Virus record (IMG/VR): IMGVR_UViG_3300027749_002876
Location: 62,001-126,000 of that record
DNA: 64,000 nucleotides
Reading direction: 5' to 3' (one strand)
Shown here: one piece after another, positions 1-58,320 of the stretch
How the letters are laid out: the number at the start of each line of letters is the position of its first letter
Numbering within the stretch: position 1 is the stretch's first letter
Notes under the pieces: generated by a model
What the model was told of the DNA's origin: nothing
What the model saw: the letters and a program-made list of their open reading frames with translations, nothing else
Database searches by the model: none
Made by a program: the position numbers and the translations under genes

Positions 1-505
1 ACATAAGTTTGGTGTAGATACAAATCGTAATCCTTTTATTGAAATAGGATTTGTATTTCATTGGAATTATAATTATATTGAATCATTAAATGAAGCACTA
101 TCTTTGTTAGAAGATGGTAGTAACGGATTGTTTAAAACAAGCCCGGGCAATGTGATAGTTATGGCCAAAGATCCAAAAGATTATGTCTTTGGAAAAAAGA
201 ATCATTATAAATTTAATGATGTATTGACAATGCATACCATTATTGATAGATTTAACAATCACATGCCTAATATACAATTGGTCATATACAATCAGAATAA
301 TACAGTTTTTTATAAACAATGCTACACACCAGAGTCATTTACAGGTAGAAAGCCTGGATTATATTCTATAGGGGATACCCTTATACTCTATGGTAATCAA
401 ACAGAAAACAATATAATAAGAATTCATCTATCAAACATCGGGGATGCATTGAAATTTATAGAACGAATTGAACTTAGTGTTGCCGGTCACGAAAGTTGTA
501 AGTGA
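1..505 (+). CDS. Hypothetical protein, 5'-truncated (frame open from the window start)
   Basis: Frame 2 has no stop from position 2 to TGA at 503-505. Confidence 0.6.
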   Translation, partial: HKFGVDTNRNPFIEIGFVFHWNYNYIESLNEALSLLEDGSNGLFKTSPGNVIVMAKDPKDYVFGKKNHYKFNDVLTMHTIIDRFNNHMPNIQLVIYNQNNTVFYKQCYTPESFTGRKPGLYSIGDTLILYGNQTENNIIRIHLSNIGDALKFIERIELSVAGHESCK

Positions 506-529
506 ATAATAAAACAGATAAGTAAAACT

Positions 530-1732
530 ATGTCAACAGAAACAAAACTAAACCATTGCACATTTTGTGGTGCCCATAAAGAAAAAGTTAAAAAACTCAT
601 TGTCAGTGAAGAGGTGGCAATTTGCAGTGATTGCGTAGACCTATGCAATAAATTGATGATGGATGATAGCCATGAAAAAATAGAACCAACGGAACACAAT
701 GTATCCTACGATCCAGAGTCTATCAAAGAATTTTTAGACCAACACATCATAGGACAAGATAGTGCTAAGGGTGTGTTAAGTGTAGCAATTGCTAACCACT
801 ATAAACGAATCAACAAGCCACCAAAAGATTTAGAAATCTCTAAGGGTAATGTTTTGTTAGTAGGACCCACTGGATCAGGTAAAACATTGCTTGCTAAAAC
901 AGTAGCAAAATACTTAGAAGTCCCCTTTATTATAGCAGATGCTACAAGTATTACTGAAGCAGGTTATGTAGGTGATGATGTTGAATCAATGATTAGTATG
1001 CTAGTCAATGCCGCCGGCGGCGATCCTAGACTAGCAGAACGCGGTATTGTGTTTGTTGATGAGATTGACAAGATTGCTCGCAGAGGTGAGTCAGCAAGTG
1101 TTACACGTGATGTATCCGGTGAGGGTGTGCAACAAGCATTACTTAAATTAGTTGAAGGTACTATATGTCGTATTCCAGCAAGTGGTGGACGCAAACACCC
1201 CGGTGGTGATATGCTTGAGATTAATACAAAAGACATTCTGTTTATTGCAGGTGGTGCGTTTGTAGGATTAAAAGAAATTATCAACAACCGCGAGAATGGA
1301 ACAAGTATTGGCTTTGGTGCAGAGATTAAAGATAATCGCAAAGAGTCAGAATTGACAAATGTGTCGCCTGATGACTTAGTTAAATTTGGAATGATTCCTG
1401 AGTTTATTGGTCGTTTTACTACTACAGTAAGTGTGAGTGATTTAAATAAAGAAGAATTGATTAAGGTTCTTAAGGAAGTTAAGAACAACTATATCGACCA
1501 ATACAAATATTTGCTCAGTTTAGACAACATTGCAATAGACTTTAATGAAGATGCATTGGATCAACTAGCAGAGAATTGCTTAAAATTAAAGACAGGTGCT
1601 CGTGGATTACATACTGAAATTGAACGCACATTAATGCCACATATGTTTAACACTAAAAAGTACCGTGAAAACAATGTTACCGAGATAAATATAGACAGAG
1701 ATTTAGTTTTGGAGCCAAAATCATTAGCATGA
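530..1732 (+). CDS. clpX: ATP-dependent Clp protease ATP-binding subunit ClpX
   Basis: N-terminal C4 zinc finger (CTFCG...CSDC), Walker A GPTGSGKT, Walker B FVDEIDK, RDVSGEGVQQALLK, RKHP, IGF loop, TGARGL. Confidence 0.97.
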   Translation: MSTETKLNHCTFCGAHKEKVKKLIVSEEVAICSDCVDLCNKLMMDDSHEKIEPTEHNVSYDPESIKEFLDQHIIGQDSAKGVLSVAIANHYKRINKPPKDLEISKGNVLLVGPTGSGKTLLAKTVAKYLEVPFIIADATSITEAGYVGDDVESMISMLVNAAGGDPRLAERGIVFVDEIDKIARRGESASVTRDVSGEGVQQALLKLVEGTICRIPASGGRKHPGGDMLEINTKDILFIAGGAFVGLKEIINNRENGTSIGFGAEIKDNRKESELTNVSPDDLVKFGMIPEFIGRFTTTVSVSDLNKEELIKVLKEVKNNYIDQYKYLLSLDNIAIDFNEDALDQLAENCLKLKTGARGLHTEIERTLMPHMFNTKKYRENNVTEINIDRDLVLEPKSLA

Positions 1733-1944
1733 GTGGAAGAAAAGTATTAGTGCAAGACGGCAACACAGAAAAAGCATTACGGAAATTCAAAAAGAAGATT
1801 ACTGATTCTGGGTTACTGCAGGAAGTTAGGGATAGACAAGAATTTGTCAAGCCCACTATCCGTCGTAAACTTGCAAAAAGTCAGGCAAAAAGACGCTGGC
1901 AGAAATACTTGCGTGACCAAAGTCTTCCTAAGAAAGAATTTTAA
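1729..1944 (+). CDS. rpsU: 30S ribosomal protein bS21
   Basis: EKALRKFKKK...GLLQEVRDRQEFVKPT signature, basic 71 aa. Confidence 0.9.
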   Translation: MSGRKVLVQDGNTEKALRKFKKKITDSGLLQEVRDRQEFVKPTIRRKLAKSQAKRRWQKYLRDQSLPKKEF

Positions 1945-1983
1945 GTTCCAAAATAGTAGATTTTTTACGTGTTTTTAGTTATA

Positions 1984-2055
1984 ATAAATACGTGTGTAGA
2001 TGCTCATGGTGAGGTCTACTTATACAGTCATCTTGCTTAATAGGAGAAAAATATG
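1984..2055 (+). promoter_or_regulatory. Late-type promoter (ATAAATA) plus ROSE-like RNA thermometer 5'UTR of hsp20
   Basis: Hairpin 1995-2018, then UCUUGCU-uaau-AGGAGA pairing over the SD with a bulged G. Confidence 0.65.
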
Positions 2056-2502
2056 ACAAAAACTTTAACCCTTCGTTCCCTCGACATTCCACAACTTCAC
2101 AAATTTGGCATCGGTTTTGATAACATGTTTGATGAAATTTTACGTGTGAATGCACAACAATCCAACAACAACTATCCACCATATAACATCGTTCAAATTA
2201 ATGAAGATGAATATACGATTAGTATTGCTGTTGCAGGCTTCAGCCAAGACGAGCTATCTATTACTAAAGAGAAAAATATCTTAGTAATTGAGGGCAAACA
2301 TGCTGATACTATTGAGGAAGAAGAAATTAACTATCTACATAAAGGTATTAGCGAACGCAATTTCCGTCGTGAGTTTCGACTTGCCGAACATGTGGTGGGA
2401 ATCTATTCTACATTAGAATTGGGTATTCTAAACATTCATTTAAAACGTGAGGTTCCTGAAGAACAAAAACCCATGACTATTGCTATTAATTACATTAAGT
2501 AA
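2053..2502 (+). CDS. Small heat-shock protein Hsp20 (IbpA-like)
   Basis: IGFD, YPPYNI, IAVAGF, YLHKGI..RNF.REF, GILNI.L. Confidence 0.95.
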   Translation: MTKTLTLRSLDIPQLHKFGIGFDNMFDEILRVNAQQSNNNYPPYNIVQINEDEYTISIAVAGFSQDELSITKEKNILVIEGKHADTIEEEEINYLHKGISERNFRREFRLAEHVVGIYSTLELGILNIHLKREVPEEQKPMTIAINYIK

Positions 2503-2567
2503 TATAATAGAAGTTAGTTAAATACAAGTGTGCGGGGTAACTCGCACACATTTAAAAAAGAAAAATT

Positions 2568-2873
2568 ATGTCCAAATCAGATACAAAAGTCAAGATTAAA
2601 CCAATAGTTAACTTGGTAGAACCTCCTCTTTATAAAATCATTTATATCAATGACACGGTTACAAGCATGAACTTTGTGGTTAACAGCCTGATTGGCTATT
2701 TTAATTACAATGAAGATACAGCTACTTCATTGACTCACAATATACATAACGAGGGTAGTGCAGTCGTTGCAGTTCTTCCATATGAAATTGCTGAACAAAA
2801 GGGAATTGAGGTTACACTAGATGCACGAAGCCAAGGATTTCCACTACAAGTCAAAGTAGAAGCAGAGGCTTAA
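2568..2873 (+). CDS. clpS: Clp protease adaptor ClpS
   Basis: EPPLYKIIYIND.T.M.FV...IH.EGSAVV...YEIAEQK...GFPL. Confidence 0.9.
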   Translation: MSKSDTKVKIKPIVNLVEPPLYKIIYINDTVTSMNFVVNSLIGYFNYNEDTATSLTHNIHNEGSAVVAVLPYEIAEQKGIEVTLDARSQGFPLQVKVEAEA

Positions 2874-3571
2874 ACCTCTATATCTATTCGTTTGGGCCAA
2901 TAAGGTTCTTTACCAAAACAAGAATTGTTGACATAATTAATATTATCTATTGTTGTGTCAACACTCTTATCATAACTCCCGTATACCCAATTACTTACTT
3001 TGCTTTCAGTATCGCTAAGTAGTGTATCTTTTAGCGCAAAATATTCTGTTATATTATGCGGTTCTTCTCCAAAAAATAATTCTGGACTTGGGGCTGAATG
3101 TGTTACTACTAAAATCTTTTTCACATCCAAATGTAGTTGAAGTTTTGCTAAACTAAGTCCTAAATACTGAATATCTTCTAGGTGCTGGGCATGTAGATGC
3201 ATTTTTTCTAAGTCTGAAGTTAATTCTATCTTATTTACATACCATCCATTACAACCTAGTATTGCAACACCATTAATGATAACCACATATTTATGCAGGA
3301 AAGAAACTTTAGGGATAGTTTTGCACAATCTAGTTAATTCATCATTTCGGTGTTTTACAAAGTGCATAGATTCGTATTCAGACGATCCTGCAATGTAGAA
3401 CACACCTTGATAGAATCTACTAAGATGAAGTAGCGTTTGATGTATGATCCTCAATTCGTTGCTGATATTGCCGGCTATCACTAGATATAAACTGGTAGCC
3501 TTACCTTCCCAATCAAAGTGGTCCTCAGCGTCCAAATTAAGGTCGCTGATTACATCAAACCCTATATTCAT
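2870..3571 (-). CDS. Calcineurin-like metallophosphoesterase (degenerate metal ligands)
   Basis: ISDL, IAGN, YIAGS.EY, VVTHSAP, WVYG; several canonical His/Asp residues replaced. Confidence 0.7.
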   Translation of the reverse strand: MNIGFDVISDLNLDAEDHFDWEGKATSLYLVIAGNISNELRIIHQTLLHLSRFYQGVFYIAGSSEYESMHFVKHRNDELTRLCKTIPKVSFLHKYVVIINGVAILGCNGWYVNKIELTSDLEKMHLHAQHLEDIQYLGLSLAKLQLHLDVKKILVVTHSAPSPELFFGEEPHNITEYFALKDTLLSDTESKVSNWVYGSYDKSVDTTIDNINYVNNSCFGKEPYWPKRIDIEV

Positions 3572-3885
3572 TAAGCTTGTGGCTTAGCTTTTGGCTTAGC
3601 CGGAGCTTTTGCTTTAGCCGGAGCTTTTGCTTTAGCCGGAGCTTTTGCTTTAGCTGAAGTTTTTGTAGCTATTGTGGCTTCTGTTCCCAATGGGATCACT
3701 TCTACTACAGGAGCAACTTCTTCCACTTTTACAGGCTCAGCGACTACGGGTGTTGTTGAAACAGGTAATTCAACTTTGTACGGAACTTCTTCAATTGTTG
3801 ATTCTGCTTGTTTACGTTTTTGATTAACGCTATAGATCCAATAACCTACTAAACCTAAAATGATTGCTACTAAAATAATTTCCAT
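3571..3885 (-). CDS. Membrane-anchored protein with Lys/Ala/Pro-rich C-terminal repeats
   Basis: N-terminal hydrophobic helix; (AKAKAP)n tail. Confidence 0.7.
   Translation of the reverse strand: MEIILVAIILGLVGYWIYSVNQKRKQAESTIEEVPYKVELPVSTTPVVAEPVKVEEVAPVVEVIPLGTEATIATKTSAKAKAPAKAKAPAKAKAPAKPKAKPQA
3599..3654. repeat. 18-bp tandem repeat x3 (GCCGGAGCTTTTGCTTTA)
   Basis: Seen directly; encodes the KAKAPA repeats. Confidence 0.9.
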
Positions 3886-3966
3886 TTTTATCTCCTAAAC
3901 ATATATTTAATCGGGTAAGATACCTAAAGTTTTTTTCCTGAAAAGTGTGTAGTTTCCATAATAACA

Positions 3967-4476
3967 ATGTATCATAAATACATGATGTTCAGAACCACTA
4001 CTATCGCCAATCTTATGCTTGAGGAATTGCCACCAATTACCTATCAAAAACGGCTTTATTATAGGACCGATCATGGTGAGGTAGTAGTATTATACAAGAT
4101 GTTAAATAAATTAATTTTCAACAATAAATTAATAATGCCCGAGATTGAAGTAATGCCTCGTTGTAGAAAGTATTGGGGAATGTGTTTTGCAACCATAAAC
4201 ATGCCCACCAAGACTGAGAGTTTTTGCAAGATCAGGTTGATGGATAAATGGTATTGCAAACAATGGCTCATCACAGTGTTAGCACATGAAATGTGTCATC
4301 AATATCAATGGGATGTACAAGGGGTGCAAAGACTTAATGAGGGTAAACAACCTATTATGAGTCATGGCCCTAGTTTCTTTGTGTTTAGAGATAAGTTAGC
4401 AAAGCATGGTATTTCACTAAAAAGCGCACATAGTCGTAGACGCTGGTTCAAACATCAAAACTTATTTAAGTGTTAA
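3967..4476 (+). CDS. SprT-like zinc metalloprotease (true start probably 3981/3984)
   Basis: LNKLIFNN.L, LAHEMCHQYQ (HExxH), SHGPSF. Confidence 0.85.
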   Translation: MYHKYMMFRTTTIANLMLEELPPITYQKRLYYRTDHGEVVVLYKMLNKLIFNNKLIMPEIEVMPRCRKYWGMCFATINMPTKTESFCKIRLMDKWYCKQWLITVLAHEMCHQYQWDVQGVQRLNEGKQPIMSHGPSFFVFRDKLAKHGISLKSAHSRRRWFKHQNLFKC

Positions 4477-4505
4477 TTCTGATAAATACTATATAGGTAT
4501 ATATT

Positions 4506-5930
4506 ATGAGAGCACACCAATTTTTAACTGAAGCACCACTTACCCCCGGAAGTTTGTTTGACCCCCGTCACTTAAAGTGGAGACCACAAAACTTTCTTAA
4601 AAAGTTAGAAGCAGGTACGCCATTTGTTGACAAAGATGGTGTTAAGTATTATCCGGACGATGGAGAATTTTCAAGAATTACTCCTATTGTTACTCAAACA
4701 CTAAAACAACTTGCAACACAACCCAACGCACCTTTACCAAGCATTGTAATCAATACTACTGATGCAGGACCGGTGCCAGTAAGTAAATTTCAAAAGGCTG
4801 ACTTAGAAACAGAAAAGGGTAAAAAGTCAAGTGAGGTTAATGTTCAACCATTGGGCATTGGCATTGCGGCTGATCCTATCAACAAACCGGGTACAAAGCC
4901 AAAAGACAAAATAACAATGACAACTGACGAAGAAATTAAAACTGCGTTGGACAAACATCAAGAAATTAAAGCAGGTAACTTGTATGATGTTATCATGTCA
5001 AATAAAACACTTGACTCTGCAGGTTTATTAGGCAAAGCAATTAAACAGGCTGCAACTGAAATGAATAATAGCCAAGTACCTGTTATTAAACAATACGATG
5101 AAGCTATGCAAAGAAAGATTGCTATTGATGCCGGTGAGTATTTAGGTGTGCTGGCAATGGTTAAAGATGTTGCTGAATTCCCTAAGAAGGCCGCCTTCTT
5201 AAATTTTTTGCGCTCACCTGATTTTGGTAATTTATCTCTTATTTTCCCCGGTGAACAGAATTCACCACTAGGCGATAGTTACGGAGTTCAAAATGCAGAA
5301 ACTGGCCACAACATTATTATCAGTAGTAAAGGTGGTAAAGGTAGTACTGCTTCAGGTGCGGCACCTAGTCTAGGTGGATTGCGTACATCTGTTGACAAGC
5401 GTAAAACAAAAATTAAAAAAGGCAATGCACTTGATTTCATAAATCACATTATTCAAGTTAGCCCAACATCGGCACAAGGTTTTGCTGGTATGAATTGGAT
5501 TGCAAATAATTATCCAGAAGCTGTACCAGAAAAGTATAGAAAATTAATTCCCTTTTACAGTGAAGATATTAAGGCAGTTTTGAAAAATATTCGTACTAAG
5601 AATGCAGAACCAATGCCCAAAAAATTCTTACCATTAATACAAGCACCAAGTATCCAAGCAAGTAAAGGTACTGATGGTGGTAAATTGGTATATGTAGTAA
5701 CCAAAGATTTGGTAGACGCTATTAATACCGGTATCATTAAAAACTTTAGAACAACTGTATTAGAATTACTAGATGAAAACTTTGTACAAATATTCTCACG
5801 CATTGTAGGTGGCAAACTAACTACCAAGGTATTGTGGCCTGGTAAAGTAGACGGCAATGTAGTATTACATACAAAAATTGCACCCGGTGAACCCGGTAAA
5901 GCTGGCTTGAGTTTTAAGGTTACCGATTAA
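4506..5930 (+). CDS. Late hypothetical protein, possibly head-packaged
   Basis: 474-aa ORF after GATAAATA; MRAHQFLTE N-terminus. Confidence 0.7.
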   Translation: MRAHQFLTEAPLTPGSLFDPRHLKWRPQNFLKKLEAGTPFVDKDGVKYYPDDGEFSRITPIVTQTLKQLATQPNAPLPSIVINTTDAGPVPVSKFQKADLETEKGKKSSEVNVQPLGIGIAADPINKPGTKPKDKITMTTDEEIKTALDKHQEIKAGNLYDVIMSNKTLDSAGLLGKAIKQAATEMNNSQVPVIKQYDEAMQRKIAIDAGEYLGVLAMVKDVAEFPKKAAFLNFLRSPDFGNLSLIFPGEQNSPLGDSYGVQNAETGHNIIISSKGGKGSTASGAAPSLGGLRTSVDKRKTKIKKGNALDFINHIIQVSPTSAQGFAGMNWIANNYPEAVPEKYRKLIPFYSEDIKAVLKNIRTKNAEPMPKKFLPLIQAPSIQASKGTDGGKLVYVVTKDLVDAINTGIIKNFRTTVLELLDENFVQIFSRIVGGKLTTKVLWPGKVDGNVVLHTKIAPGEPGKAGLSFKVTD

Positions 5931-5942
5931 TACCAAAATCAT

Positions 5943-5971
5943 TTGACTTCAACACAGACTTCTGATATAAT
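5943..5971 (+). promoter_or_regulatory. Sigma70-type promoter for clpP
   Basis: TTGACT-17-TATAAT. Confidence 0.75.
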
Positions 5972-5999
5972 AGTGTAAACATTTTTATAAAGGAAGTTT

Positions 6000-6587
6000 A
6001 TGAGTCTAGTCCCAATGGTAATCGAGCAAACCGCTAAAGGTGAGCGTAGTTACGATATATACAGCCGTCTATTGCGCGACCGTGTTATTTTGCTAGAAGG
6101 CGAAGTACATGATCAAATGGCCAATCTTATTGTTGCCCAACTCTTGTTCTTAGAGTCTGAAGGTGACAAAGATATATCAATGTACATCAATAGTCCCGGT
6201 GGTTCAGTTACAGCAGGTATGGCAATCTATGATTGTATGCAGTTCATTGCTCCCGACATTCACACTATTGTTATGGGTCAAGCATGTTCAATGGGTAGCT
6301 TACTTGCACAAGCAGGTGCTAAAGATAAACGATTTATGTTGCCAAACGCACGACATATGATTCATCAACCTTCTGGTGGCGCCCGTGGTCAAGCAACTGA
6401 TATGTTGATTCAAGTGGAAGAAATGCTGGCAATGAAAAAGAACCTCACACAAATCTATGTTAACCACAACAGTGCAGGCAAGACATTCGAACAACTAACT
6501 GCTGATATGGAACGTGATAACTTTATGTCTGCACAACAAGCATTAGCATATGGTCTAATCGACAAAATCATCGATAAACGCAGTTAA
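6000..6587 (+). CDS. clpP: ATP-dependent Clp protease proteolytic subunit
   Basis: LVPMVIEQ...[18 protein letters not shown], catalytic ACSMG / MIHQP / ERDNF. Confidence 0.98.
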
Positions 6588-6659
6588 ATACGCTTTACCC
6601 ATCTTGTAGTCAGTAATTTACTAATCATAAATACAATATGACTAACAGATGGGTAACCC

Positions 6660-9563
6660 ATGGATGAATTAGATCCGCGTAAATTATACGAACTTTCGGA
6701 ATCTCTCAACGAACTTACCGGTACAGTAAAATATACCGGCACAGCCATGCAGTCCATGTTGGGACCTCAGGCTGAAGCAAACAAGAAATTAAAAAACTCA
6801 GGTAAAAAACGTGCCAAGGTTGAAGAACAGGCGGCTGAACAACAAGCAAAGCAGTTAACCAAACAGGAAGAATCTCAAGCAAAACAGAAAAAAATGCTTG
6901 ATGATGAGTTACGATATCGCGGCTACGCAATAGATGCAACAGGTAACTTAACTAAAACAACCACATCACTAAGTGGTGCTCAAAAGCAAGCACTAGAATC
7001 ATTGGATAAGCGTATTGCCAAAGAGCGTGAACTTGCTGAAGTAATTAAAGATCCAGTCAAATCATTTAGAAGCATATCAAGCAGTATAAACAGCCTCGAC
7101 GGTGTTATGGGCCAGATGCAGGAGAAGATGTTTGAGATGACTGGTAAGAGCGTGCCAATGGCAGCAGGTCTTATCGCAGCCACAGCAGTTGTCGGTGGAG
7201 TAGTTAAAGCCGCAACCGGAATGGCTGACTCACTATATAAAGGTGAACGTGGTGCTAAAGTTGGTGCTAAAGCAGTTAAAGATTTAAATGATTCAGTAAC
7301 TAAAGCCGCATATGGTATCAGTGCGGCACTGATGTTTATGCCCGGATTGGGAATTGTTGCTAAAGTATTAGGAGCCGCAATTGGGCTGTTTTCTTTGGCA
7401 ATGGAGGGTTCCACAAAACTAATAGAAATGGGTGCAGAGTATAACGATAAGGTATACGATTCATTCAATAAATTAAGCGAGACGGGGTTAATAACAGCTA
7501 AGGGCATGAGTGGTGTTAGTAACACCATGGAAAAGCTAGGAGTAACAAGTGCTGAAATAGAGAAGATGAATTCTCTATTAGCAAGCAACTCAAAAGACTT
7601 AGCATTATTTGGTGGGACTGCGGCAGGTGGATTAGAAAAATTCACAGAAGTTGCCGGAACTATTTCACATCCAGCAAGTGAATTAAACAAAAAATTAATG
7701 TTGCTTGGTATATCAAGTGACGAACAAAGAGAACATACATTAAAGTACATGGCTTTGCAAACACGCATGGGCATGACGCAAGGCAAGACACAAGCTGACC
7801 TAGTTAAAGGTTCTGTTGCCTACATGGAAGAACTAGATAGAATTGCTTCTATCACTGGAATAGGTCGTAAAGAACAAGAAGAAGCACAGAAGCAGGTAAT
7901 GGCTATTGAAGAATTACGTGCGGCAATGTTCCAAGCTGAACGTAGTAGTGATACTAAACGACAAAAAGAATTAGAAACAGCATTTAAATACTCTAGCCGA
8001 TTGATGGCTGAGGGTAGAAAGAAAGAAGCGGCCGGTGTTGCTAAGTATTATGCCGCAGGTAAAAATGTTGTTGACAGTGATTCGGCAATGGCAGCACAGA
8101 ATAGTGCAGGTGCTATTAAAGCTATTGGTGAAGGTAAAGAAGGCGAAGATGTTTATCAAGAAGGCATCAAGAGTGCTAAAGAATCTGCTATACGTACAGC
8201 AGGCACTAAGCGAATTGGCGGTGATGTGTCTAATCAAATTGGAGACTTCAATGCTACACTAGATGCTATTAAACGTAGTGAGAAGTCGCAAGAGGAAATG
8301 AAGAAACTGGGTCTAAGTCCAGAAGCATATGCTAAAAAACTTCAAAAAGAAAAAGAAGAAAAGCCTGATCCAAATTTAGCAAAGAATGTTGATGCTATGC
8401 AGATACAGCAGAAGGCTGGTTTGACAATGGATCAAGCGGCAAAGGCAATGGATGGTGCAGGTCTTGCAATGGCATCATCAGTTAAGGCATTTAATGAGGC
8501 AGTGAAATTATTTAATCAAGCTTCTGGTACTGGCCCAGCACAAGGAGCCGCAGTAGAGAAAGCTAAACAAGCAGATACAGCGGCATTGAATAAACAACAA
8601 GCCGCAATGGATGCTAATAAGAAAACGCAAAATGATCCAACTGCAACAAAAGCACAAAAAGAATCTGCACAAAAATCAGAGGATGATGCTAATAAAGAGT
8701 CAATGAAGGCAATGGCGGCTAAGAGAGAAGCCTTCCTAAAAGAACAAAATGAATTACGTGAACTAAACAAAAAACAACGTGGTTCCGGCAAAGAAGTATT
8801 CAAGACCATGGAAGATGCACGAAAGGCTGGAGCCGCACCAAAAGCTGAAACAGCTCCGACGGCGGCTGCACCAAAAGCTGAAACAGCTCCGACGCAGGCT
8901 GCTAAGCCGGCATCATCACCTACGCCATCACCCGGTGCACCTTCAGAAGGTCACAGTGAAGGGGGTACAGAAAAATCAGCACCACCGGCTGCGCCAACAT
9001 CGGCTCCACCAGTTTCATTAAAATCAAGCTCAACCAAAACTGATTTATTAATAGCAAATGAACCAGTCACTGCTGATAAGCCATTAAGTAAAACACAAAT
9101 GTCAATAATTGAGCTTGGTATTAGTCAAGGAAATAAATTCTCTGACATGGTAATGCAAAAGTTCAATTCTCAAATGTTTGGTGCCAAACCAGTAGCTCCA
9201 AATTCTAAACCTGTGGGTGATGTTGAAATTCCAATTGACAAGGCTGCGACCGGGGGAGTATTTGACGGGCCGGGTAAGAATTCAGTAATGCTAAACAATA
9301 GCACTATGGCTGCAAATGATATATTAGCTTCACTCAGAGAATCATTTGGTAGTGTTCAAAAGAAATCAGTTGAGAGTGAATTACCAAAATTAACTAAATT
9401 TAATACAATGACTTCTTCAAGTAGAGGTATTTCAACAAATAGTTCAATGGACATACTAGAAAAATTTACTGACATTATGGAACAGAAACTATCCGACGTT
9501 ATAGATGCTATATCGGATAACAATAACATTAAAGAAGAAATCTTACTTTACAGTAAAGCATAA
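6660..9563 (+). CDS. Long alpha-helical virion protein (tape-measure/baseplate-hub-like)
   Basis: 967 aa, Ala/Lys/Glu-rich coiled coil, hydrophobic Gly/Ala segment, Pro-rich linker, late promoter upstream. Confidence 0.5.
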   Translation: MDELDPRKLYELSESLNELTGTVKYTGTAMQSMLGPQAEANKKLKNSGKKRAKVEEQAAEQQAKQLTKQEESQAKQKKMLDDELRYRGYAIDATGNLTKTTTSLSGAQKQALESLDKRIAKERELAEVIKDPVKSFRSISSSINSLDGVMGQMQEKMFEMTGKSVPMAAGLIAATAVVGGVVKAATGMADSLYKGERGAKVGAKAVKDLNDSVTKAAYGISAALMFMPGLGIVAKVLGAAIGLFSLAMEGSTKLIEMGAEYNDKVYDSFNKLSETGLITAKGMSGVSNTMEKLGVTSAEIEKMNSLLASNSKDLALFGGTAAGGLEKFTEVAGTISHPASELNKKLMLLGISSDEQREHTLKYMALQTRMGMTQGKTQADLVKGSVAYMEELDRIASITGIGRKEQEEAQKQVMAIEELRAAMFQAERSSDTKRQKELETAFKYSSRLMAEGRKKEAAGVAKYYAAGKNVVDSDSAMAAQNSAGAIKAIGEGKEGEDVYQEGIKSAKESAIRTAGTKRIGGDVSNQIGDFNATLDAIKRSEKSQEEMKKLGLSPEAYAKKLQKEKEEKPDPNLAKNVDAMQIQQKAGLTMDQAAKAMDGAGLAMASSVKAFNEAVKLFNQASGTGPAQGAAVEKAKQADTAALNKQQAAMDANKKTQNDPTATKAQKESAQKSEDDANKESMKAMAAKREAFLKEQNELRELNKKQRGSGKEVFKTMEDARKAGAAPKAETAPTAAAPKAETAPTQAAKPASSPTPSPGAPSEGHSEGGTEKSAPPAAPTSAPPVSLKSSSTKTDLLIANEPVTADKPLSKTQMSIIELGISQGNKFSDMVMQKFNSQMFGAKPVAPNSKPVGDVEIPIDKAATGGVFDGPGKNSVMLNNSTMAANDILASLRESFGSVQKKSVESELPKLTKFNTMTSSSRGISTNSSMDILEKFTDIMEQKLSDVIDAISDNNNIKEEILLYSKA

Positions 9564-53292: not shown

Positions 53293-53368
53293 TGGCATCC
53301 CGGGTAAGCCTCGAACTTACAACCCCTGGTTTTGGAGACCAGTGCTCTGCCAATTGAGCTACCGAGAT
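53293..53368 (-). tRNA. tRNA-Trp(CCA)
   Basis: Cloverleaf, encoded CCA end. Confidence 0.93.
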
Positions 53369-53375
53369 ATATTCT

Positions 53376-53597
53376 TTATGCGTTTTTTCTAATACGCTTG
53401 AGGTATTCTCTACCCACAAGTCCTGCTTCAATTTCTTGAAGTGCAGTCACAATAGGACCTGCTTTAGAGACTAGTGTAGAACGATGTCCACGCTTTAACT
53501 CTCTTACTCTATGTGAAGCGATAAGAACTAAATCAAATCGATTACCAACCATATTAACGGCGTCTTCACTTGTATATCTTGCTCTGCTTTCAGTCAT
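53376..53597 (-). CDS. rpoZ: RNA polymerase omega subunit
   Basis: AR.T.EDA...VGNRFDLVLIAS.R.REL...TAL.EI..G. Confidence 0.9.
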   Translation of the reverse strand: MTESRARYTSEDAVNMVGNRFDLVLIASHRVRELKRGHRSTLVSKAGPIVTALQEIEAGLVGREYLKRIRKNA

Positions 53598-53608
53598 TTT
53601 CTTCCTTT

Positions 53609-54208
53609 TTAAAATTCAAACATTAATCTTTTCATTGTCTCAAAATAAATTTTAGGTCTTAATGCTAATGCAGGCCTTAATGTTAATACAACTCTTTCAT
53701 TATCTGATTGTGAATTATCCCAATCGTGAAATATTTCGGTATTAAACAATATTGCTTCATTGGGCTGAGCCACCATTGATTTAACCGGGGAGTGTTTAGT
53801 TTTATCAAATCCAACACATTCCCTTGATCCATTATGTTTAGGATCGATTTCATACATAGATAAATCTTCATCACTATACCAGCTGGTCACACACTTATCA
53901 TCTAATATTTTAGAAGTATAATTTATACTAACATGGTCAAATGATCCGTCTTTATGAGCCCTATATGTCATATGCGGCTTTGATATGAATAACGATACCC
54001 GATCAATTTCTAATGGTGGAAATTTTAAGGGAATCATACTCAGCATTTTTTTAGATTCATCTGGCTGTAATTTATAATGAGTAAAATCTTCATTTATCTT
54101 ATAAATATCCGGGGTGATTACATTGCAATAATCTATTATAGACTGTATACCGGCGTGAGTATATCTAATATAATAAGGACTACAATCTTCAATGATTTCG
54201 TATTTCAT
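53609..54208 (-). CDS. Fe(II)/2OG oxygenase- or cupin-like protein
   Basis: AHKD...LFNT...H...N...R..L..R. Confidence 0.6.
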   Translation of the reverse strand: MKYEIIEDCSPYYIRYTHAGIQSIIDYCNVITPDIYKINEDFTHYKLQPDESKKMLSMIPLKFPPLEIDRVSLFISKPHMTYRAHKDGSFDHVSINYTSKILDDKCVTSWYSDEDLSMYEIDPKHNGSRECVGFDKTKHSPVKSMVAQPNEAILFNTEIFHDWDNSQSDNERVVLTLRPALALRPKIYFETMKRLMFEF

Positions 54209-54210
54209 GC

Positions 54211-54864
54211 TTACTCTAAAAATAATAGGTTGTTATTTTTAAATACATCTCTCCAGTATCCTGTGTTAGGTATCAGAGCCCATAATTTAGTATTTTCAAA
54301 AACTATCAATGTTCTATTTTTTTTTGTTTGATTTAATGCGACCGCAACCCCATTAAACCAGGGATGAAAATCATCTCCTAGTAATAATCCGGTATCGGAT
54401 TCATACTTTTCAATATCATGTTTAACATCCAATAATGTATGTGAAGCATCAATAAAGGTAAGATCGTAATGTTTTACTTTCTCAAAATCTTTGCTAGAAG
54501 TAGGGTGTACATTTATATTAGCATACATTTCTTCACCTATACAAAATCTAAATGCATCATGCCATCCTGTAGCTTTTGCAATTTCTCTTGCATCAGCATA
54601 CATAATAGGATCGCCTAGTGCAAATTGCAAATTTTCAAACTCAATATTTAATAATGATTGGCTAGAAACAATTCTAAAATTATCAACTATATCCATGCTT
54701 ACAGAAGAATTTTTACCTCTATAGAGGGCAGTAGTAGAACTACCCAAAAAACAACCTATTTCTAAAATAGAACCATTATCAGGAACATAACCAGCCAATG
54801 TTGAAAGAATTATTAATTCTTTTTCGAGCATCCAACCCGGAATGTTTACATTGTATTTTTGCAT
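54211..54864 (-). CDS. Class I SAM methyltransferase
   Basis: PGWM, LEIGC..GSST, FIDASH, GDD. Confidence 0.85.
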   Translation of the reverse strand: MQKYNVNIPGWMLEKELIILSTLAGYVPDNGSILEIGCFLGSSTTALYRGKNSSVSMDIVDNFRIVSSQSLLNIEFENLQFALGDPIMYADAREIAKATGWHDAFRFCIGEEMYANINVHPTSSKDFEKVKHYDLTFIDASHTLLDVKHDIEKYESDTGLLLGDDFHPWFNGVAVALNQTKKNRTLIVFENTKLWALIPNTGYWRDVFKNNNLLFLE

Positions 54865-54884
54865 ATTGTATTTATGTTTATATT

Positions 54885-54960
54885 TGGAGCGGGAAATCGG
54901 GTTCGAACCGACGACATTCACGTTGGCAACGTGATGCTCTACCAACTGAGCTATTCCCGC
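54885..54960 (-). tRNA. tRNA-Gly(GCC)
   Basis: Cloverleaf. Confidence 0.95.
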
Positions 54961-54967
54961 ATATTCT

Positions 54968-55042
54968 TGGTACATCGACACGGTTTCGAACCGCGGACCC
55001 TCTCCGTGTAAAGGAGACGCTCTACCCCTGAGCTATCGATGC
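54968..55042 (-). tRNA. tRNA-Val(TAC)
   Basis: Cloverleaf. Confidence 0.95.
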
Positions 55043-55052
55043 ATATTTTTAT

Positions 55053-55232
55053 TTAACCCCCTTGAGAGCTGTCTTTAACTTCTGTTTCTCTAGCAATTTT
55101 TTCAAACGCTTCATCTTCATTCTTTTGATCCTCAATCATTCTTGGATCAGGCTTACGAAAGATTTTGTCATAGTTGTTTGCATATTCTTGTTGACTGACA
55201 CTGTATGGTCTTGGACTAGAACCTTTGCTCAC
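55053..55232 (-). CDS. Small protein, 59 aa (MSKGSSPRPYSVSQQEY...DKIF), GTG start, not in the ORF track
   Basis: GTGA overlap with the upstream ORF. Confidence 0.6.
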   Translation of the reverse strand: MSKGSSPRPYSVSQQEYANNYDKIFRKPDPRMIEDQKNEDEAFEKIARETEVKDSSQGG

Positions 55233-55399
55233 TTCTTGTCCCCTTTACCCCCACTGTATGATCGCAAACCTTCTTGTGCAATCTTAGCATAGCTACGCAA
55301 AAATGAACCACGTACATGTGGATCAAGAATTTGAGCGGCTGCAATCTTTACTAGCTTACCGATTTTAACGGCTTTTGGGTCATAACCTCTGCATGTCAT
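55229..55399 (-). CDS. Small hypothetical protein
   Basis: AGGA SD before MTCRGYD. Confidence 0.6.
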   Translation of the reverse strand: MTCRGYDPKAVKIGKLVKIAAAQILDPHVRGSFLRSYAKIAQEGLRSYSGGKGDKK

Positions 55400-55422
55400 A
55401 CTATCTTCCTTTGTTAAAAACT

Positions 55423-55499
55423 TGGTCGGAATAGTAGGATTCGAACCTACGACCTCTTGCTCCCAAAGCAAGCGCACTACCAGGCTGTGCTACACTCCG
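55423..55499 (-). tRNA. tRNA-Pro(TGG)
   Basis: Cloverleaf. Confidence 0.95.
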
Positions 55500-55503
55500 T
55501 AAT

Positions 55504-55577
55504 TGGATGCGGGTGACAGATTCGAACTGCCGATGCACCTGGCTTATGAGACCGGTGTGGTGACCACCCAACCCGCG
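55504..55577 (-). tRNA. Atypical initiator-like tRNA(CAT)
   Basis: CGCGGG 5' end, C1:A72 mismatch, truncated D-arm. Confidence 0.7.
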
Positions 55578-55581
55578 TATT

Positions 55582-56268
55582 TCACAATTCTGCATAATTA
55601 GTAATACTTGGTGGTTTAGCAAACGCATCCACATACATAATCTTACTGTTATCTTTTATTGTTAATTTATTAATGTAATTATACACTACTTCAAAAGTTT
55701 GTTTGTATATTTCGGGATTATCGTATGTAAAATGCGGAGCTATAGCTGTTGCTATTGCACCTTTGTCATTGTGTTCGGCAAATGCCCTCATCATGTGAGC
55801 TTGCATTGCTTTGCTTCCTGCATACCCCGCATAACTTGTCCATTCATTACGATTGAACTTTACTGCCATATATGATATAATAAAAATAATTTTACTATTT
55901 TCATTCATTCGTTTTAATGCTTCTACACCCAAAACATGAGGTATATGGCATGCAAGTCTTATATTCTCTTCCCATCTTTTTAAGTCAACTACACTAGTAG
56001 AAGTAAAGCAATTTTCATCATTTGGATAAGAACCTGAATTGGAATTAAAAAGAATCATATCAACAGTATCAACATCTTTGGTCACTTCATTAAATGCTTC
56101 TACTACACATTGAACACTATCAAAGTTTGCTTTGATATCATGTGGATGTCCTGTATTGTAATTCTTGTGAGATACAATATAAACGTTATGACCATCAGTA
56201 CGCATACGCAATACTAGGTCATTACCAAACTTACCGGGTTCACCTCCCCCTATTATCACTATGTTCAT
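55582..56268 (-). CDS. Short-chain dehydrogenase/reductase-like protein
   Basis: IGG...G.FG, YAGSK (YxxxK). Confidence 0.75.
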   Translation of the reverse strand: MNIVIIGGGEPGKFGNDLVLRMRTDGHNVYIVSHKNYNTGHPHDIKANFDSVQCVVEAFNEVTKDVDTVDMILFNSNSGSYPNDENCFTSTSVVDLKRWEENIRLACHIPHVLGVEALKRMNENSKIIFIISYMAVKFNRNEWTSYAGYAGSKAMQAHMMRAFAEHNDKGAIATAIAPHFTYDNPEIYKQTFEVVYNYINKLTIKDNSKIMYVDAFAKPPSITNYAEL

Positions 56269-56288
56269 ATTATGAGTCCTCAAGTATT

Positions 56289-56364
56289 TGGTGGAGGATA
56301 CCAGGATCGAACTGGTCACCTACTGCTTGCAAAGCAGCCGCTCTCCCAAATGAGCTAATCCCCC
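56289..56364 (-). tRNA. tRNA-Ala(TGC)
   Basis: Cloverleaf with G3:U70. Confidence 0.95.
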
Positions 56365-56438
56365 ATGTAGAAACACACTTGATATAGTAGCAAAAGCTAT
56401 CACGGATGAACCCGAGTTTAGTCAAATATGTTTTTATA
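56365..56438 (-). ncRNA. Candidate small RNA with a long closing stem
   Basis: AUAUAAAAACAUAUUUGA/UCAAGUGUGUUUCUACAU. Confidence 0.5.
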
Positions 56439-56515
56439 TGGTGCCCCAGAGGAGACTCGAACTCCTAAAATTTGGCTTCTAAGACCAACACGTATACCAA
56501 TTCCGTCACCAGGGC
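56439..56515 (-). tRNA. tRNA-Leu(TAG) with short variable region
   Basis: Leu-type D-arm, 77 nt. Confidence 0.88.
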
Positions 56516-56516
56516 A

Positions 56517-56605
56517 GTTATAATATAACACACTACGAATCTCCTTCTAAGTTATGGACCTAGCGAGTACTCCAGTTGTGTTCATGTAATGTGTTATATT
56601 ATAAC
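56517..56605 (-). ncRNA. Candidate small RNA / 16-bp inverted repeat overlapping a promoter -10
   Basis: GTTATAATATAACACA/TGTGTTATATTATAAC; TTGACA-17-TATAAT at 56598-56626. Confidence 0.5.
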
Positions 56606-56690
56606 ATATATCTATTTATATGTCAACTATCTTTGGATAAGAAGAACTCAGACGTATGATAACCATTTACCGGTTAGTTATTACAGAGGT

Positions 56691-57227
56691 CTAAGCCGTG
56701 TTATATATTGCTAGATCACCATAGCGTTTTAAACTACACTCTATCAATTGTTTATGTTTTTCTACATCCAAGAAACCTTTAATATAAAGTGTTTCTCTCA
56801 TAAAATCTTCCTTTACTCTATGCAAACATGCGGTAAGATTAAGCAGGTATGCTATGGGCACTTGAGGCAATATAGGAGTTATCCATTCTTTGCCATTAAA
56901 TATTTCAAGCGAGTCGCATTTACCTTTTAATACTACATGATACCCAGCCGGTTCAGCTTGTGCAATGTGTTTATATTCATTAGATAAATTATCACCGGGA
57001 TAATAATCATGGTGAGGATTAACTACTATTTGTTGAAACTTATGCGTAAATGTTGTGATATCTATTATTGGTATTTGATCTAATAAACTTCTATATTGTT
57101 GATAGTTATTTTCTTTACCAAGAACTTCTTTTGTTTCCCAAAAATTTTGATGATAGGTATGTTGATCACCTAACTCAAAACTAGTTTCAGTAACGTCTAT
57201 ATCTAGTGGAACAAATAATAATTTCAT
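56691..57227 (-). CDS. Oxygenase/cupin-like hypothetical protein
   Basis: PHHD, EP.GY, H.V...R; TTAAATA-4-ATG. Confidence 0.6.
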   Translation of the reverse strand: MKLLFVPLDIDVTETSFELGDQHTYHQNFWETKEVLGKENNYQQYRSLLDQIPIIDITTFTHKFQQIVVNPHHDYYPGDNLSNEYKHIAQAEPAGYHVVLKGKCDSLEIFNGKEWITPILPQVPIAYLLNLTACLHRVKEDFMRETLYIKGFLDVEKHKQLIECSLKRYGDLAIYNTA

Positions 57228-57244
57228 CTAGTATTTAATAACAT

Positions 57245-57318
57245 TGGAGCGGGGTAACAGAATCGAACTGTCAGCATTAGCTTGGAAGGCTAAGGTATTA
57301 CCACTATACGAACCCCGC
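57245..57318 (-). tRNA. tRNA-Gly(TCC)
   Basis: Cloverleaf. Confidence 0.95.
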
Positions 57319-57330
57319 ATAAATATATTT

Positions 57331-57495
57331 ATGTACATATATGACGCTATCACAAAAACAGGACTTGTTATACACTTATCAATGAGTGCTGAACATACAT
57401 TTTACATTATGGTATTTGATATTGACAACTTCACATTGACCATGAAATTCTTCAACAACATCGAAACAGCACTTGCTTTTATACAAGCACTTTAG
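57331..57495 (+). CDS. Small protein antisense to the tRNA array
   Basis: CATAAATA just upstream of ATG. Confidence 0.5.
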   Translation: MYIYDAITKTGLVIHLSMSAEHTFYIMVFDIDNFTLTMKFFNNIETALAFIQAL

Positions 57496-57500
57496 TTAAC

Positions 57501-57578
57501 TGGAGCAACGGGTCAGATTTGAACTGACGGTTTTACGGATTTGCAATCCGTTGCATTGGGCCGCTCTGCCACCGTTGC
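57501..57578 (-). tRNA. tRNA-Cys(GCA)
   Basis: Cloverleaf, U73. Confidence 0.92.
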
Positions 57579-57582
57579 ATAT

Positions 57583-57792: not shown

Positions 57793-57793
57793 C

Positions 57794-57881: not shown

Positions 57882-57888
57882 TGATACT

Positions 57889-57965: not shown

Positions 57966-57971
57966 ATTGTT

Positions 57972-58319: not shown

Positions 58320-58320
58320 A

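What the first reader, a model, noticed from the sequence alone, without database searches (positions are those of the whole stretch)
530..6587. Phage-encoded ClpXP, ClpS, Hsp20 and bS21: a proteostasis/translation takeover block
Seen: intact clpX (IGF loop, zinc finger), rpsU coupled to it by an ATGA overlap, hsp20, clpS, an SprT-like protease, and a host-type clpP with full catalytic residues and its own sigma70 promoter. Established: ClpS normally partners ClpA, and ClpXP degrades ssrA-tagged and regulatory proteins. Inference: the phage brings its own degradation machine and N-degron adaptor to re-target host proteins such as antitoxins or defence proteins. No clpA is in this window.
Basis: partly seen in the sequence, partly recalled or inferred. 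Interest (0 to 1): 0.6.

Follow-up and report, generated by a model that had tools for sequence, protein, structure and literature searches.

The report
Conserved Clp proteostasis module in freshwater jumbo phages
The window really does carry an intact, phage-encoded ClpX–bS21–Hsp20–ClpS–ClpP gene module, which is conserved across a large clade of ~350-kb freshwater phages that also encode ClpA and a tmRNA; similar phage Clp sets are already published, and the 524-kb record holding it is probably one and a half phage genomes joined in assembly.

Summary
The module clpX–rpsU–hsp20–clpS–(metallophosphoesterase-like gene, minus strand)–SprT-like–variable slot–clpP keeps its order in 80 of 80 related IMG/VR contigs. 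It is under strong purifying selection (median dN/dS 0.07–0.19) and its catalytic and docking residues are invariant.

The "missing" ClpA is about 60 kb upstream, next to a DnaJ-like gene. Every complete relative has one ClpA, one ClpX and one permuted tmRNA whose tag ends in [L/I]AA, the ClpX degron. The phages therefore carry ClpXP, ClpAPS, a tmRNA and chaperones. SspB and SmpB were not found.

The record is viral (terminase, S77 prohead protease, no rRNA), but it is probably not a 524-kb phage. A 347.5-kb unit closes on itself, and the window lies in a 173-kb piece of a second, related phage.

Phage ClpX forms one clade outside all sampled cellular ClpX.

Comparable Clp sets are published for Atu_ph07-type jumbo phages, so novelty is modest. 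New here are the compact module and a thermometer-like hsp20 leader.

The parts
530..1732 (+). clpX: AAA+ unfoldase with an N-terminal C4 zinc finger and an IGF loop for docking on ClpP
   Evidence: NF003745 509.6 bits (cut-off 359). Aligns with E. coli ClpX 8e91_A. Motifs invariant in 65 unique clade sequences. dN/dS median 0.068.
1729..1944 (+). rpsU: ribosomal protein bS21, translationally coupled to clpX by an ATGA overlap
   Evidence: TIGR00030 56.4 bits. Overlap read and conserved in 38 of 41 unique junctions. Found in 71 of 80 related loci.
1975..2057 (+). hsp20 leader. It has a -10-like TATAAT (1980-1985) and hairpin 1 (1996-2019). A weak second hairpin pairs GUCAU (2027-2031) with AUGAC (2053-2057), and UUGCU (2033-2037) with the AGGAG Shine-Dalgarno (2042-2046). 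This is a candidate RNA thermometer.
   Evidence: Conserved in 52 unique relatives. 8 of 9 pairs in hairpin 1 show compensatory changes. Single-sequence folds hide SD and AUG, with z of -2 to -4.4 in 5 of 6. No Rfam match at E<=1.
2053..2502 (+). hsp20: small heat-shock protein, closest to IbpA
   Evidence: Pfam HSP20 62 bits. IbpA NF008013 134 bits, below its cut-off of 212. phrog_432. Found in 75 of 80 loci.
2568..2873 (+). clpS: N-degron adaptor for ClpAP
   Evidence: Pfam ClpS 80.7 bits. PDB ClpS matches. Pocket residues N28, D29, T32, F36 and H60 are invariant and M34 is present in 51 of 56. Complex model with the phage ClpA N-domain scored 0.85 against a best control of 0.26.
2870..3571 (-). 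u233: conserved protein with a metallophosphoesterase fold and substituted metal-ligand motifs; role unknown
   Evidence: Found in 74 of 80 loci. AlphaFold pLDDT 91.9. Foldseek matches PptH, MPPED2 and Rv0805 at TM 0.56-0.70. phrog_1649.
3571..3885 (-). u104: small poorly conserved ORF
   Evidence: Detected in 1 of 80 loci by tblastn. No family above cut-off.
3967..4476 (+). SprT-like zinc metallopeptidase
   Evidence: PF10263 30 bits (cut-off 25.6). HExxH at 107-111 invariant in 40 unique sequences. Found in 50 of 80 loci.
4506..5930 (+). u474: occupant of a variable slot between the SprT-like gene and clpP
   Evidence: No Pfam, NCBIfam or PHROG hit. 30% identity to the B-copy occupant. Found in 21 of 80 loci.
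5943..5971 (+). sigma-70-type promoter-like site for clpP
   Evidence: TTGACT-17-TATAAT with TG, 11 of 12. Conserved 23-29 nt upstream of the ATG through the A/B subclade.
6000..6587 (+). clpP: host-type Clp peptidase that starts at the mature N-terminus
   Evidence: Pfam 260.8 bits. NF001368 304 bits (cut-off 249). The Ser97/His122/Asp173 contexts and the N-terminal LVPMV are conserved.

Best explanation
The block is a vertically inherited proteostasis module of a large clade of ~350-kb freshwater myovirus-like phages related to the Atu_ph07, PA5oct and Rak2 group.

Together with genes elsewhere in the same genomes, it gives the infected cell a second set of ATP-dependent proteolysis and chaperone machinery:
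- ClpXP, which among other substrates degrades proteins carrying the phage tmRNA tag ending in [L/I]AA.
- ClpAP with ClpS, for N-degron substrates.
- An IbpA-like small heat-shock protein, which may be under translational control by a thermometer-like leader.
- Co-chaperones: a DnaJ-like protein beside ClpA, and DnaK inside the module in some relatives.

bS21 is co-translated with ClpX.

The most likely role is autonomous protein quality control, ribosome rescue and clean-up, and timed turnover of proteins during a long, protein-heavy infection.

Shown: gene identity, intactness, conservation, selection and co-occurrence. Inferred: activity, partners and role.
For: - Family assignments and motifs.
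- Synteny in 80 of 80 related contigs.
- dN/dS of 0.07-0.19.
- ClpA is full length, has no ClpB-type middle domain, and has IGF at the ClpP-docking loop.
- Each of five complete or near-complete relatives has one ClpA, one ClpX and one tmRNA.
- tmRNA tags read ANDSQFSIAA, ANDELYSLAA, ANDSQFALAA (three times) and ANDSVFALAA.
- The ClpS-ClpA N-domain model scored 0.85 against a best control of 0.26. That mark was reached by 51 of 78 solved complexes and 2 of 108 mismatched pairs, with at least 91% contact agreement between runs and partner pLDDT of at least 88.
- DnaK lies in or beside the module in 22 of 80 relatives.
- A separate S77 prohead protease exists.
- Phage ClpX is monophyletic and lies outside the sampled cellular ClpX.
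- Similar sets are reported in cultured jumbo phages: PMC6102473, PMC11242549, PMC7824862.
Against: - There are no expression, activity or substrate data.
- The ClpS-ClpA model resembles a solved E. coli complex, so its pass may reflect memory of that structure.
- ClpS, ClpA and Hsp20 score below NCBIfam equivalog cut-offs, so their specificity may differ from the model enzymes.
- SmpB and SspB were not found, so tmRNA function would depend on the host's SmpB.
- The tmRNA was seen in the complete unit B and in relatives, not on the 173-kb arm that holds the window.
- 'General quality control' and 'targeted host takeover' cannot be told apart from sequence.
Confidence: 0.55

Rival explanations
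1. One reading: the phage Clp machines and ClpS mainly re-target specific host proteins (defence proteins, regulators, antitoxins) for destruction as a takeover or counter-defence weapon.
For: - Iyer et al. (PMC7824862) suggest that patchily distributed ClpP and ClpS in jumbo phages may be deployed against the host.
- ClpS position 30 (E. coli D36) varies (E/N/D/T) within an otherwise fixed pocket.
- A variable slot sits between the SprT-like gene and clpP.
- The phage ClpX lineage is long diverged from cellular ClpX.
Against: - No substrate evidence exists.
- The recognition elements are host-like (RKH, zinc finger, N-degron pocket), and the tmRNA tag is canonical.
- Extra antitoxin degradation would favour abortive infection (inference).
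- Strong conservation across hundreds of contigs looks more like housekeeping than an arms race.
Confidence: 0.2
2. The module mainly times the phage's own programme. ClpXP/ClpAP would remodel or remove phage replication, transcription or early proteins (as host ClpXP does for lambda O and Mu proteins), with bS21 biasing translation.
For: - Precedent is cited for Atu_ph07 and AP-J-162 (PMC6102473, PMC11242549).
- clpX is tightly coupled to rpsU.
- The module lies in a non-structural arm near a DNA ligase gene.
Against: - No phage substrates have been identified.
- The presence of sHSP, DnaJ/DnaK, ClpS and a tmRNA points to broad quality control rather than a single regulatory switch.
Confidence: 0.15
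3. ClpP is simply the head-maturation protease, and the neighbouring genes are assembly chaperones.
For: ClpP matches PHROG head-maturation protease families (phrog_94, 176.7 bits) and the NCBIfam ClpP-related head-maturation model at 108.5 bits.
Against: - That NCBIfam score is below its cut-off of 120, while the true ClpP subfamily model scores 304 against 249.
- The genome has its own T4-type S77 prohead protease in the structural region.
- The module lies far from the terminase and structural genes.
- ClpX and ClpA both carry IGF loops for docking on ClpP.
Confidence: 0.04
4. The block is cellular DNA, or an assembly artefact, misfiled as viral.
For: - The 524-kb record is probably a composite.
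- A distant relative of the module sits in a contig binned as a Haliscomenobacter MAG.
Against: - That MAG contig carries the same phage module in the same order, and the MAG has a separate 47%-identical ClpX of its own.
- No rRNA was found.
- 276 viral contigs carry the same clpX lineage, including four 349-364 kb records at 100% CheckV completeness, one with terminal repeats.
- Phage ClpX lies outside all 104 sampled cellular ClpX.
Confidence: 0.02

Closest known systems
Clp/chaperone gene sets of the Atu_ph07 and AP-J-162 jumbo phages (Agrobacterium, Sinorhizobium; 'group 2.2' of Iyer et al. 2021)
   Same: Phage-encoded ClpX, ClpA (adjacent to DnaJ), ClpP, ClpS, Hsp20 and bS21, with a tmRNA in AP-J-162 (PMC6102473, PMC11242549, PMC7824862). 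By terminase, the nearest cultured relatives are Sinorhizobium Phosso 50.7%, PA5oct 48.7% and GAP32 43%.
   Different: In those phages the Clp genes are scattered (gp2, gp292, gp676 and gp708 in Atu_ph07). Here clpX, rpsU, hsp20, clpS and clpP form one compact module with fixed order, ATGA coupling and a structured hsp20 leader. No ClpB-type frame was seen: the Clp_N search found only the two ClpA frames. The genomes are ~350 kb and come from fresh water.
Bacterial ClpXP / ClpAPS / tmRNA quality-control system (E. coli paradigm)
   Same: All defining motifs of ClpX, ClpP and ClpA; the ClpS N-degron pocket; an ssrA-like tag ending in LAA or IAA.
   Different: ClpX is only 46-52% identical to the sampled cellular ClpX and forms a separate clade. 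ClpP has no propeptide. SspB and SmpB were not found. The tmRNA is of the permuted two-piece type. The gene order is unlike the bacterial tig-clpP-clpX-lon arrangement (own knowledge).
bS21-encoding freshwater phages of Chen et al. 2022 (PMC9723584)
   Same: Large freshwater phages with bS21. That paper records Hsp20 (n=127) and two Clp protease families (n=50 and 47) among the common neighbours of phage bS21 genes.
   Different: In their clades bS21 lies on the reverse strand among structural genes and the predicted hosts are Bacteroidetes. Here rpsU is coupled to clpX in a non-structural arm, and the strong Shine-Dalgarno sites and sigma-70-type promoter fit a proteobacterial-type host better (inference).
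ROSE-type RNA thermometers on ibpA/hsp20 genes
   Same: A leader hairpin followed by a weak helix in which UUGCU pairs with the AGGAG Shine-Dalgarno and the AUG is also occluded, upstream of an IbpA-like gene.
   Different: No Rfam ROSE family matches at E<=1. The leader is shorter and phage-encoded, and its response to temperature is untested.

Membership tests
ClpX | N-terminal C4 zinc finger, plus an AAA+ module with Walker A/B, GYVG pore loop, RKH loop, IGF loop, arginine finger and sensor II | tested here: met
   all present and invariant or nearly so in 65 unique sequences. NCBIfam equivalogs score 509.6 against 359 and 486.3 against 370.75.
ClpX | ATP-dependent unfolding and delivery of substrates to ClpP | not testable with these tools
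   Needs biochemistry.
ClpP | Ser-His-Asp triad in the GxAxSMG / MIHQP / ERD contexts, plus N-terminal axial loop residues | tested here: met
   S97, H122 and D173 invariant in 50 unique sequences. NF001368 scores 304.1 against 249.
ClpP | Score above the strict equivalog model TIGR00493 | tested here: not met
   289 bits against a cut-off of 308.6. Just below, which fits a diverged viral lineage.
ClpS | ClpS fold with N-degron pocket residues (E. coli N34, D35, T38, M40, H66) | tested here: met
   Pfam 80.7 against 23. N28, D29, T32 and H60 are invariant, M34 is present in 51 of 56, and position 30 (E. coli D36) varies.
ClpS | NCBIfam equivalog cut-offs | tested here: not met
   Best is 70.4 bits against a cut-off of 149.
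ClpS | Binds the ClpA N-domain | tested here: inconclusive
   The model supports binding, 0.85 against a best control of 0.26, but a similar complex has been solved, so the pass shows likeness and does not prove binding.
ClpA | Clp_N domain plus two AAA+ modules, no ClpB middle domain, and a ClpP-docking IG[LF] loop | tested here: met
   End-to-end alignment with E. coli ClpA 1ksf (5-740 to 4-744). IGF sits where E. coli has IGL, and both Walker A/B pairs are present. TIGR02639 aligns over positions 3-730 of 734.
ClpA | NCBIfam equivalog cut-off | tested here: not met
   773.6 bits against a cut-off of 993.15.
bS21 | Ribosomal_S21 family score | tested here: met
   TIGR00030 56.4 against 28.95; Pfam 58.4 against 27. 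Incorporation into ribosomes not testable.
Hsp20 / IbpA | Alpha-crystallin domain; IbpA equivalog | tested here: inconclusive
   Pfam HSP20 is met (62 against 20.8). The IbpA equivalog is not met (134.1 against 212).
SprT-like metallopeptidase | SprT-like domain with HExxH | tested here: met
   30 bits against 25.6. H107, E108 and H111 invariant.
tmRNA (permuted, beta type) | Rfam gathering scores and an ssrA-like tag | tested here: met
   RF04321 98.9 against 47 and RF01850 95.4 against 84. Four of five relatives score above the cut-off. Tags end in [L/I]AA. It lies in genome unit B, not in the window.
ROSE RNA thermometer | Match to the Rfam ROSE models | tested here: not met
   No Rfam match at E<=1 in window 1-7000. 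Only the architecture resembles ROSE.
Megaphage with a genome over 500 kb | One continuous genome of the stated size with single-copy core genes | tested here: not met
   - A 347,553-bp unit is bounded by a 4,089-bp direct repeat that runs to the contig end.
- 297 of 628 ORFs are duplicated as a diverged inverted arm.
- Complete relatives are 349-364 kb with single ClpX, ClpA and tmRNA.
- There is one terminase and one S77 protease.

The most novel reading that the evidence does not exclude
These phages run an orthogonal, stress-responsive proteostasis regulon. A thermometer-controlled sHSP, phage-specific ClpXP and ClpAPS, a phage tmRNA and a ClpX-coupled bS21 would act together as a phage-owned ribosome-associated quality-control circuit, keeping the takeover running when the host's heat-shock response is shut off or turned against the phage.
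Probability: 0.15. Interest if true: 0.6.

Novelty: new member of a known kind. Interest (0 to 1): 0.35.

Why it matters
- **Complete set in an abundant clade.** A very abundant, uncultured freshwater phage clade (more than 276 contigs by ClpX, more than 599 by terminase) carries a near-complete bacterial-type proteolysis and chaperone system, with ClpA to match ClpS and a tmRNA whose tag matches ClpX. This turns 'scattered Clp genes in jumbo phages' into a defined, conserved module that can be cloned and tested.
- **Database quality.** A record that appears as a 524-kb phage at '100% completeness' is most likely about 1.5 genomes. That matters for size records and for any gene-copy-number claims made from it.
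- **Possible RNA thermometer.** If the hsp20 leader proves to be one, it would be, as far as I know, the first RNA thermometer reported on a phage gene.

Tried and rejected
- **PHROG scan of ten large window ORFs.** It gave almost nothing, so viral identity had to come from whole-record searches instead.
- **Cellular donor for ClpX.** The genome-contig scan was limited by its search patterns and gave 45-51% hits from unrelated phyla. An even sample of 201 genomes of the class holding a Neisseriaceae MAG gave a uniform 46-52%. That sample included one unpublished genome, G049; no claim depends on it and it is not in the tree. No donor lineage was found. True Bacteroidota and many other phyla were barely sampled.
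- **The 'Haliscomenobacter' hit (59%).** Rejected as cellular, because the contig carries the same phage module.
- **Rfam scan for a known thermometer or other RNA in 1-7000.** Nothing at E<=1.
- **Exact-match search for the A-side junction flank in IMG/VR.** No hits, so uninformative.
- **Read depth at the junction.** It cannot separate 'repeat present twice in one molecule' from 'segment shared by two phages'.
- **First dN/dS script.** It timed out and was redone.
- **Alternative genetic code.** Considered and dropped. Table 11 gives 95% coding density and normal stop-codon usage.
- **Searches not used.** The search for homologous proteins and the large representative-protein search were not needed, because family scans settled every named gene.

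Full report
**Observation**

- clpX, 530-1732: NCBIfam equivalog 509.6 bits against a cut-off of 359.
- rpsU (bS21), 1729-1944.
- hsp20, 2053-2502: best match is IbpA.
- clpS, 2568-2873.
- SprT-like peptidase, 3967-4476.
- clpP, 6000-6587.

Alignment with solved structures shows the following.
- In ClpX: the C4 zinc finger, Walker A, GYVG, Walker B, RKH, IGF, the arginine finger and sensor II.
- In ClpP: the Ser/His/Asp contexts, and an N-terminus that begins at the mature LVPMV with no propeptide.
- In ClpS: the N-degron pocket Asn-Asp and His.

The ATGA overlap between clpX and rpsU is in the sequence. The clpP promoter-like site at 5943-5971 scores 11 of 12 with a TG extension. However, promoter-like sites overall are no more frequent than in shuffled sequence.

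**Is it a phage, and is the record sound?**

The window is bases 62,001-126,000 of a single 524,565-bp IMG/VR virus record.

Viral features:
- No SSU rRNA.
- 56 tRNAs and a tmRNA.
- 95% coding density in the standard code.
- One T4-type terminase and one S77 prohead protease.
- Tail-fibre and virion proteins.

By terminase, the nearest cultured phages are Sinorhizobium Phosso (50.7%), Pseudomonas PA5oct (48.7%) and Cronobacter GAP32 (43%).

The record is odd in several ways.
- 297 of 628 ORFs have a paralogue, and about 14-152 kb mirrors about 522-399 kb in inverted order at diverged identity. This includes a second copy of the whole module at 463,963-473,309, with ClpX 81%, ClpP 93% and Hsp20 54% identical.
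- The only long near-identical repeat is 172,924-177,012 against 520,477-524,565. It is direct, 99.6% identical, and runs to the contig end, which marks out a 347,553-bp unit.
- Complete relatives are 349-364 kb, one with terminal repeats. Each has exactly one ClpX, one ClpA and one tmRNA.
- In those relatives, and on the window's arm, ClpA and ClpX lie about 38-70 kb apart. In unit B they are 63 kb apart only if the unit is closed through the repeat (coordinates).
- The A and B copies are saturated at synonymous sites (dS > 1).
- Other contigs (L010, L014) are closer to copy A than copy B is.
- Metagenome 3300009151 assembled the A arm (L009, 100% identical) and the B arm (L022, DnaK 100% identical) as separate contigs. 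It also holds a separate terminase contig at 86% identity.

I conclude, at roughly 75-80% confidence, that the record is a complete ~348-kb phage (B) joined to a 173-kb piece of a related phage (A, which holds the window).

A caveat applies. Logan contigs from three samples bridge the A flank into the repeat, so that join exists in real DNA. One sample shows only the A context and another mostly the B context. The 16 mismatches all lie in the first ~92 bp of the repeat. The join sits inside a multi-copy glycine-rich gene, next to a Dps-like gene and an HNH endonuclease gene. What follows the repeat in phage A is unknown. The window itself is colinear with B and with all relatives, so the finding does not rest on the join.

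**The module**

In 80 related contigs the order is fixed: clpX, rpsU, hsp20, clpS, u233 (minus strand), SprT-like, a variable slot, clpP.

| Gene | Loci with the gene (of 80) |
|---|---|
| ClpX | 80 |
| Hsp20 | 75 |
| ClpS | 75 |
| u233 | 74 |
| bS21 | 71 |
| ClpP | 62 |
| SprT-like | 50 |

Most absences are contig ends. bS21 is truly missing in about eight loci, where hsp20 follows clpX directly.

- Median dN/dS is 0.07-0.19 for every gene.
- Functional residues are invariant across 65 ClpX, 50 ClpP, 56 ClpS and 40 SprT-like unique sequences. Only ClpS position 30 (E. coli D36) varies.
- The ATGA coupling holds in 38 of 41 unique junctions.
- The clpP promoter is conserved in place and sequence in the A/B subclade, while other subclades carry a different conserved upstream element.
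- In or beside the module, 22 of 80 relatives, including copy B, carry a full-length DnaK, usually between rpsU and hsp20. The window copy lacks it.
- u233 folds confidently (pLDDT 91.9) as a calcineurin-like metallophosphoesterase. By my reading of alignment A2, several canonical metal ligands are replaced.

**Partners elsewhere in the genome**

Two 757-aa ClpA-type proteins, each beside a DnaJ-like gene, lie at 846-3119 (arm A) and 188,778-191,051 (unit B). They align end to end with E. coli ClpA, lack a ClpB middle domain, keep both Walker A/B pairs, and have IGF at the ClpP-docking loop.

A ClpS-ClpA N-domain model scored 0.85 against a best control of 0.26.
- That mark was reached by 51 of 78 solved complexes and 2 of 108 mismatched pairs.
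- The runs agreed in at least 91% of contacts, and partner pLDDT was at least 88.
- A similar complex has been solved, so this shows likeness and does not prove binding.

Unit B carries a permuted tmRNA (RF04321 98.9 bits, RF01850 95.4 bits). All five relatives have one too, and every tag ends in [L/I]AA. SmpB and SspB were not found.

**Origin**

Sampled cellular ClpX is 45-52% identical to the phage protein. In a quick maximum-likelihood tree, 25 phage sequences form one clade, separated by a fully supported long branch from 104 cellular ones. The cellular sample is uneven, so the donor remains unknown. The '59% Haliscomenobacter' contig is a phage contig with the same module.

The strong Shine-Dalgarno sites, the sigma-70-type promoter, the proteobacterial character of the IbpA/ClpA/ClpS matches and the beta-type tmRNA together suggest a proteobacterial host. 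This is inference.

**Mechanism and novelty**

I favour an autonomous quality-control and regulated-proteolysis system over specific anti-host targeting. Sequence alone cannot decide between them.

Published work already reports the following:
- ClpX, ClpA+DnaJ, ClpB, ClpP and ClpS in Atu_ph07 (PMC6102473).
- Six Clp ORFs, Hsp20, DnaJ, bS21 and a tmRNA in AP-J-162 (PMC11242549).
- ClpP, ClpS, SprT-like peptidases, ClpA, ClpX and DnaJ across group 2.2 jumbo phages (PMC7824862).
- Hsp20 and Clp proteases as frequent neighbours of phage bS21 (PMC9723584).

The finding is therefore a new member of a known kind. What is new is the compact, coupled module in an abundant freshwater clade, the demonstration that the set is complete, and the structured hsp20 leader.

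**The hsp20 leader**

All 52 unique relatives share the same leader. It consists of:
- a -10-like TATAAT;
- a hairpin with compensatory changes in 8 of 9 pairs;
- an invariant CUUGCUUA;
- a weak helix hiding the Shine-Dalgarno sequence and the AUG.

This is the architecture of a ROSE-type thermometer, but Rfam gives no match.

Noticed in passing
whole record G000; join at genome 172,923/172,924 (outside the window); repeat at 172,924-177,012 and 520,477-524,565: The 524,565-bp 'complete' virus record is probably a 347.5-kb complete phage plus a 173-kb arm of a related phage. About half of all ORFs are duplicated as a diverged inverted arm, whereas complete relatives are 349-364 kb with single-copy ClpX, ClpA and tmRNA. 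Contigs from three samples nevertheless bridge the join, so its nature is not fully settled.
   Followed up: partly
window 1975-2057: The hsp20 5' leader is conserved and structured. Its first hairpin is supported by covariation, and a weak second helix pairs UUGCU with the Shine-Dalgarno sequence and GUCAU with the start codon. The architecture resembles a ROSE-type RNA thermometer, but there is no Rfam match.
   Followed up: partly
window 2870-3571 (-): u233 is present in 74 of 80 related modules and has a confident metallophosphoesterase fold (nearest PptH, MPPED2, Rv0805). It appears to have lost several canonical metal-binding residues, so it may be a pseudo-enzyme or have an unusual active site.
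   Followed up: partly
genome 469,901-471,847 (-), i.e. L006; and 22 of loci L009-L088: A full-length DnaK/HSP70 lies between rpsU and hsp20 in copy B and, in or beside the module, in 22 of 80 relatives. It is absent from the window's copy.
   Followed up: yes
genome 15-3819 (L003) and 188,069-191,884 (L004): A conserved trio of a DnaJ-like gene (269 aa), ClpA (757 aa) and an unknown 240-aa protein. The DnaJ-ClpA adjacency matches Atu_ph07 gp292-gp293.
   Followed up: partly
genome 288,480-288,896 (L005 1981-2397); relatives L286-L290: A permuted (two-piece) beta-type tmRNA with the tag ANDSQFSIAA. All five relatives have one, and their tags end in LAA. No SmpB gene was found in the record.
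   Followed up: yes
L287 1934-2008 and L290 2950-3024 (relatives G001, G004): A tRNA with a CUA anticodon (amber suppressor; ARAGORN calls it tRNA-Pyl) sits next to or near the tmRNA in two relatives. None was called in this record, where TAG is a rare stop (37 of 628).
   Followed up: no
window 53,293-64,000 (genome 115,293-126,526) and genome 417,045-426,585: Two tRNA arrays of about 30 and 25 genes are mirror copies on the two arms. The window holds most of one of them.
   Followed up: no
genome 311,466-329,135 (-): A single 5,889-aa ORF lies in the central region. I did not examine it.
   Followed up: no
genome 170,790; 172,457; 518,181; 520,016 and about 270-288 kb, 358-361 kb: A multi-copy family of glycine-rich proteins starts with MT[IV]TVTGGITFSGG. 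The A|B join lies inside one member, next to a Dps-like gene and an HNH endonuclease gene (175,024-175,620).
   Followed up: partly
L181 and genome G009 (contigs C31, C57): A 6.9-Mb MAG labelled Haliscomenobacter contains two contigs with phage-type ClpX (59-60%) besides its own ClpX (47%). At least one of them (C31, locus L181) carries the phage module in the same order, so it is a mis-binned phage contig; C57 was not examined.
   Followed up: partly
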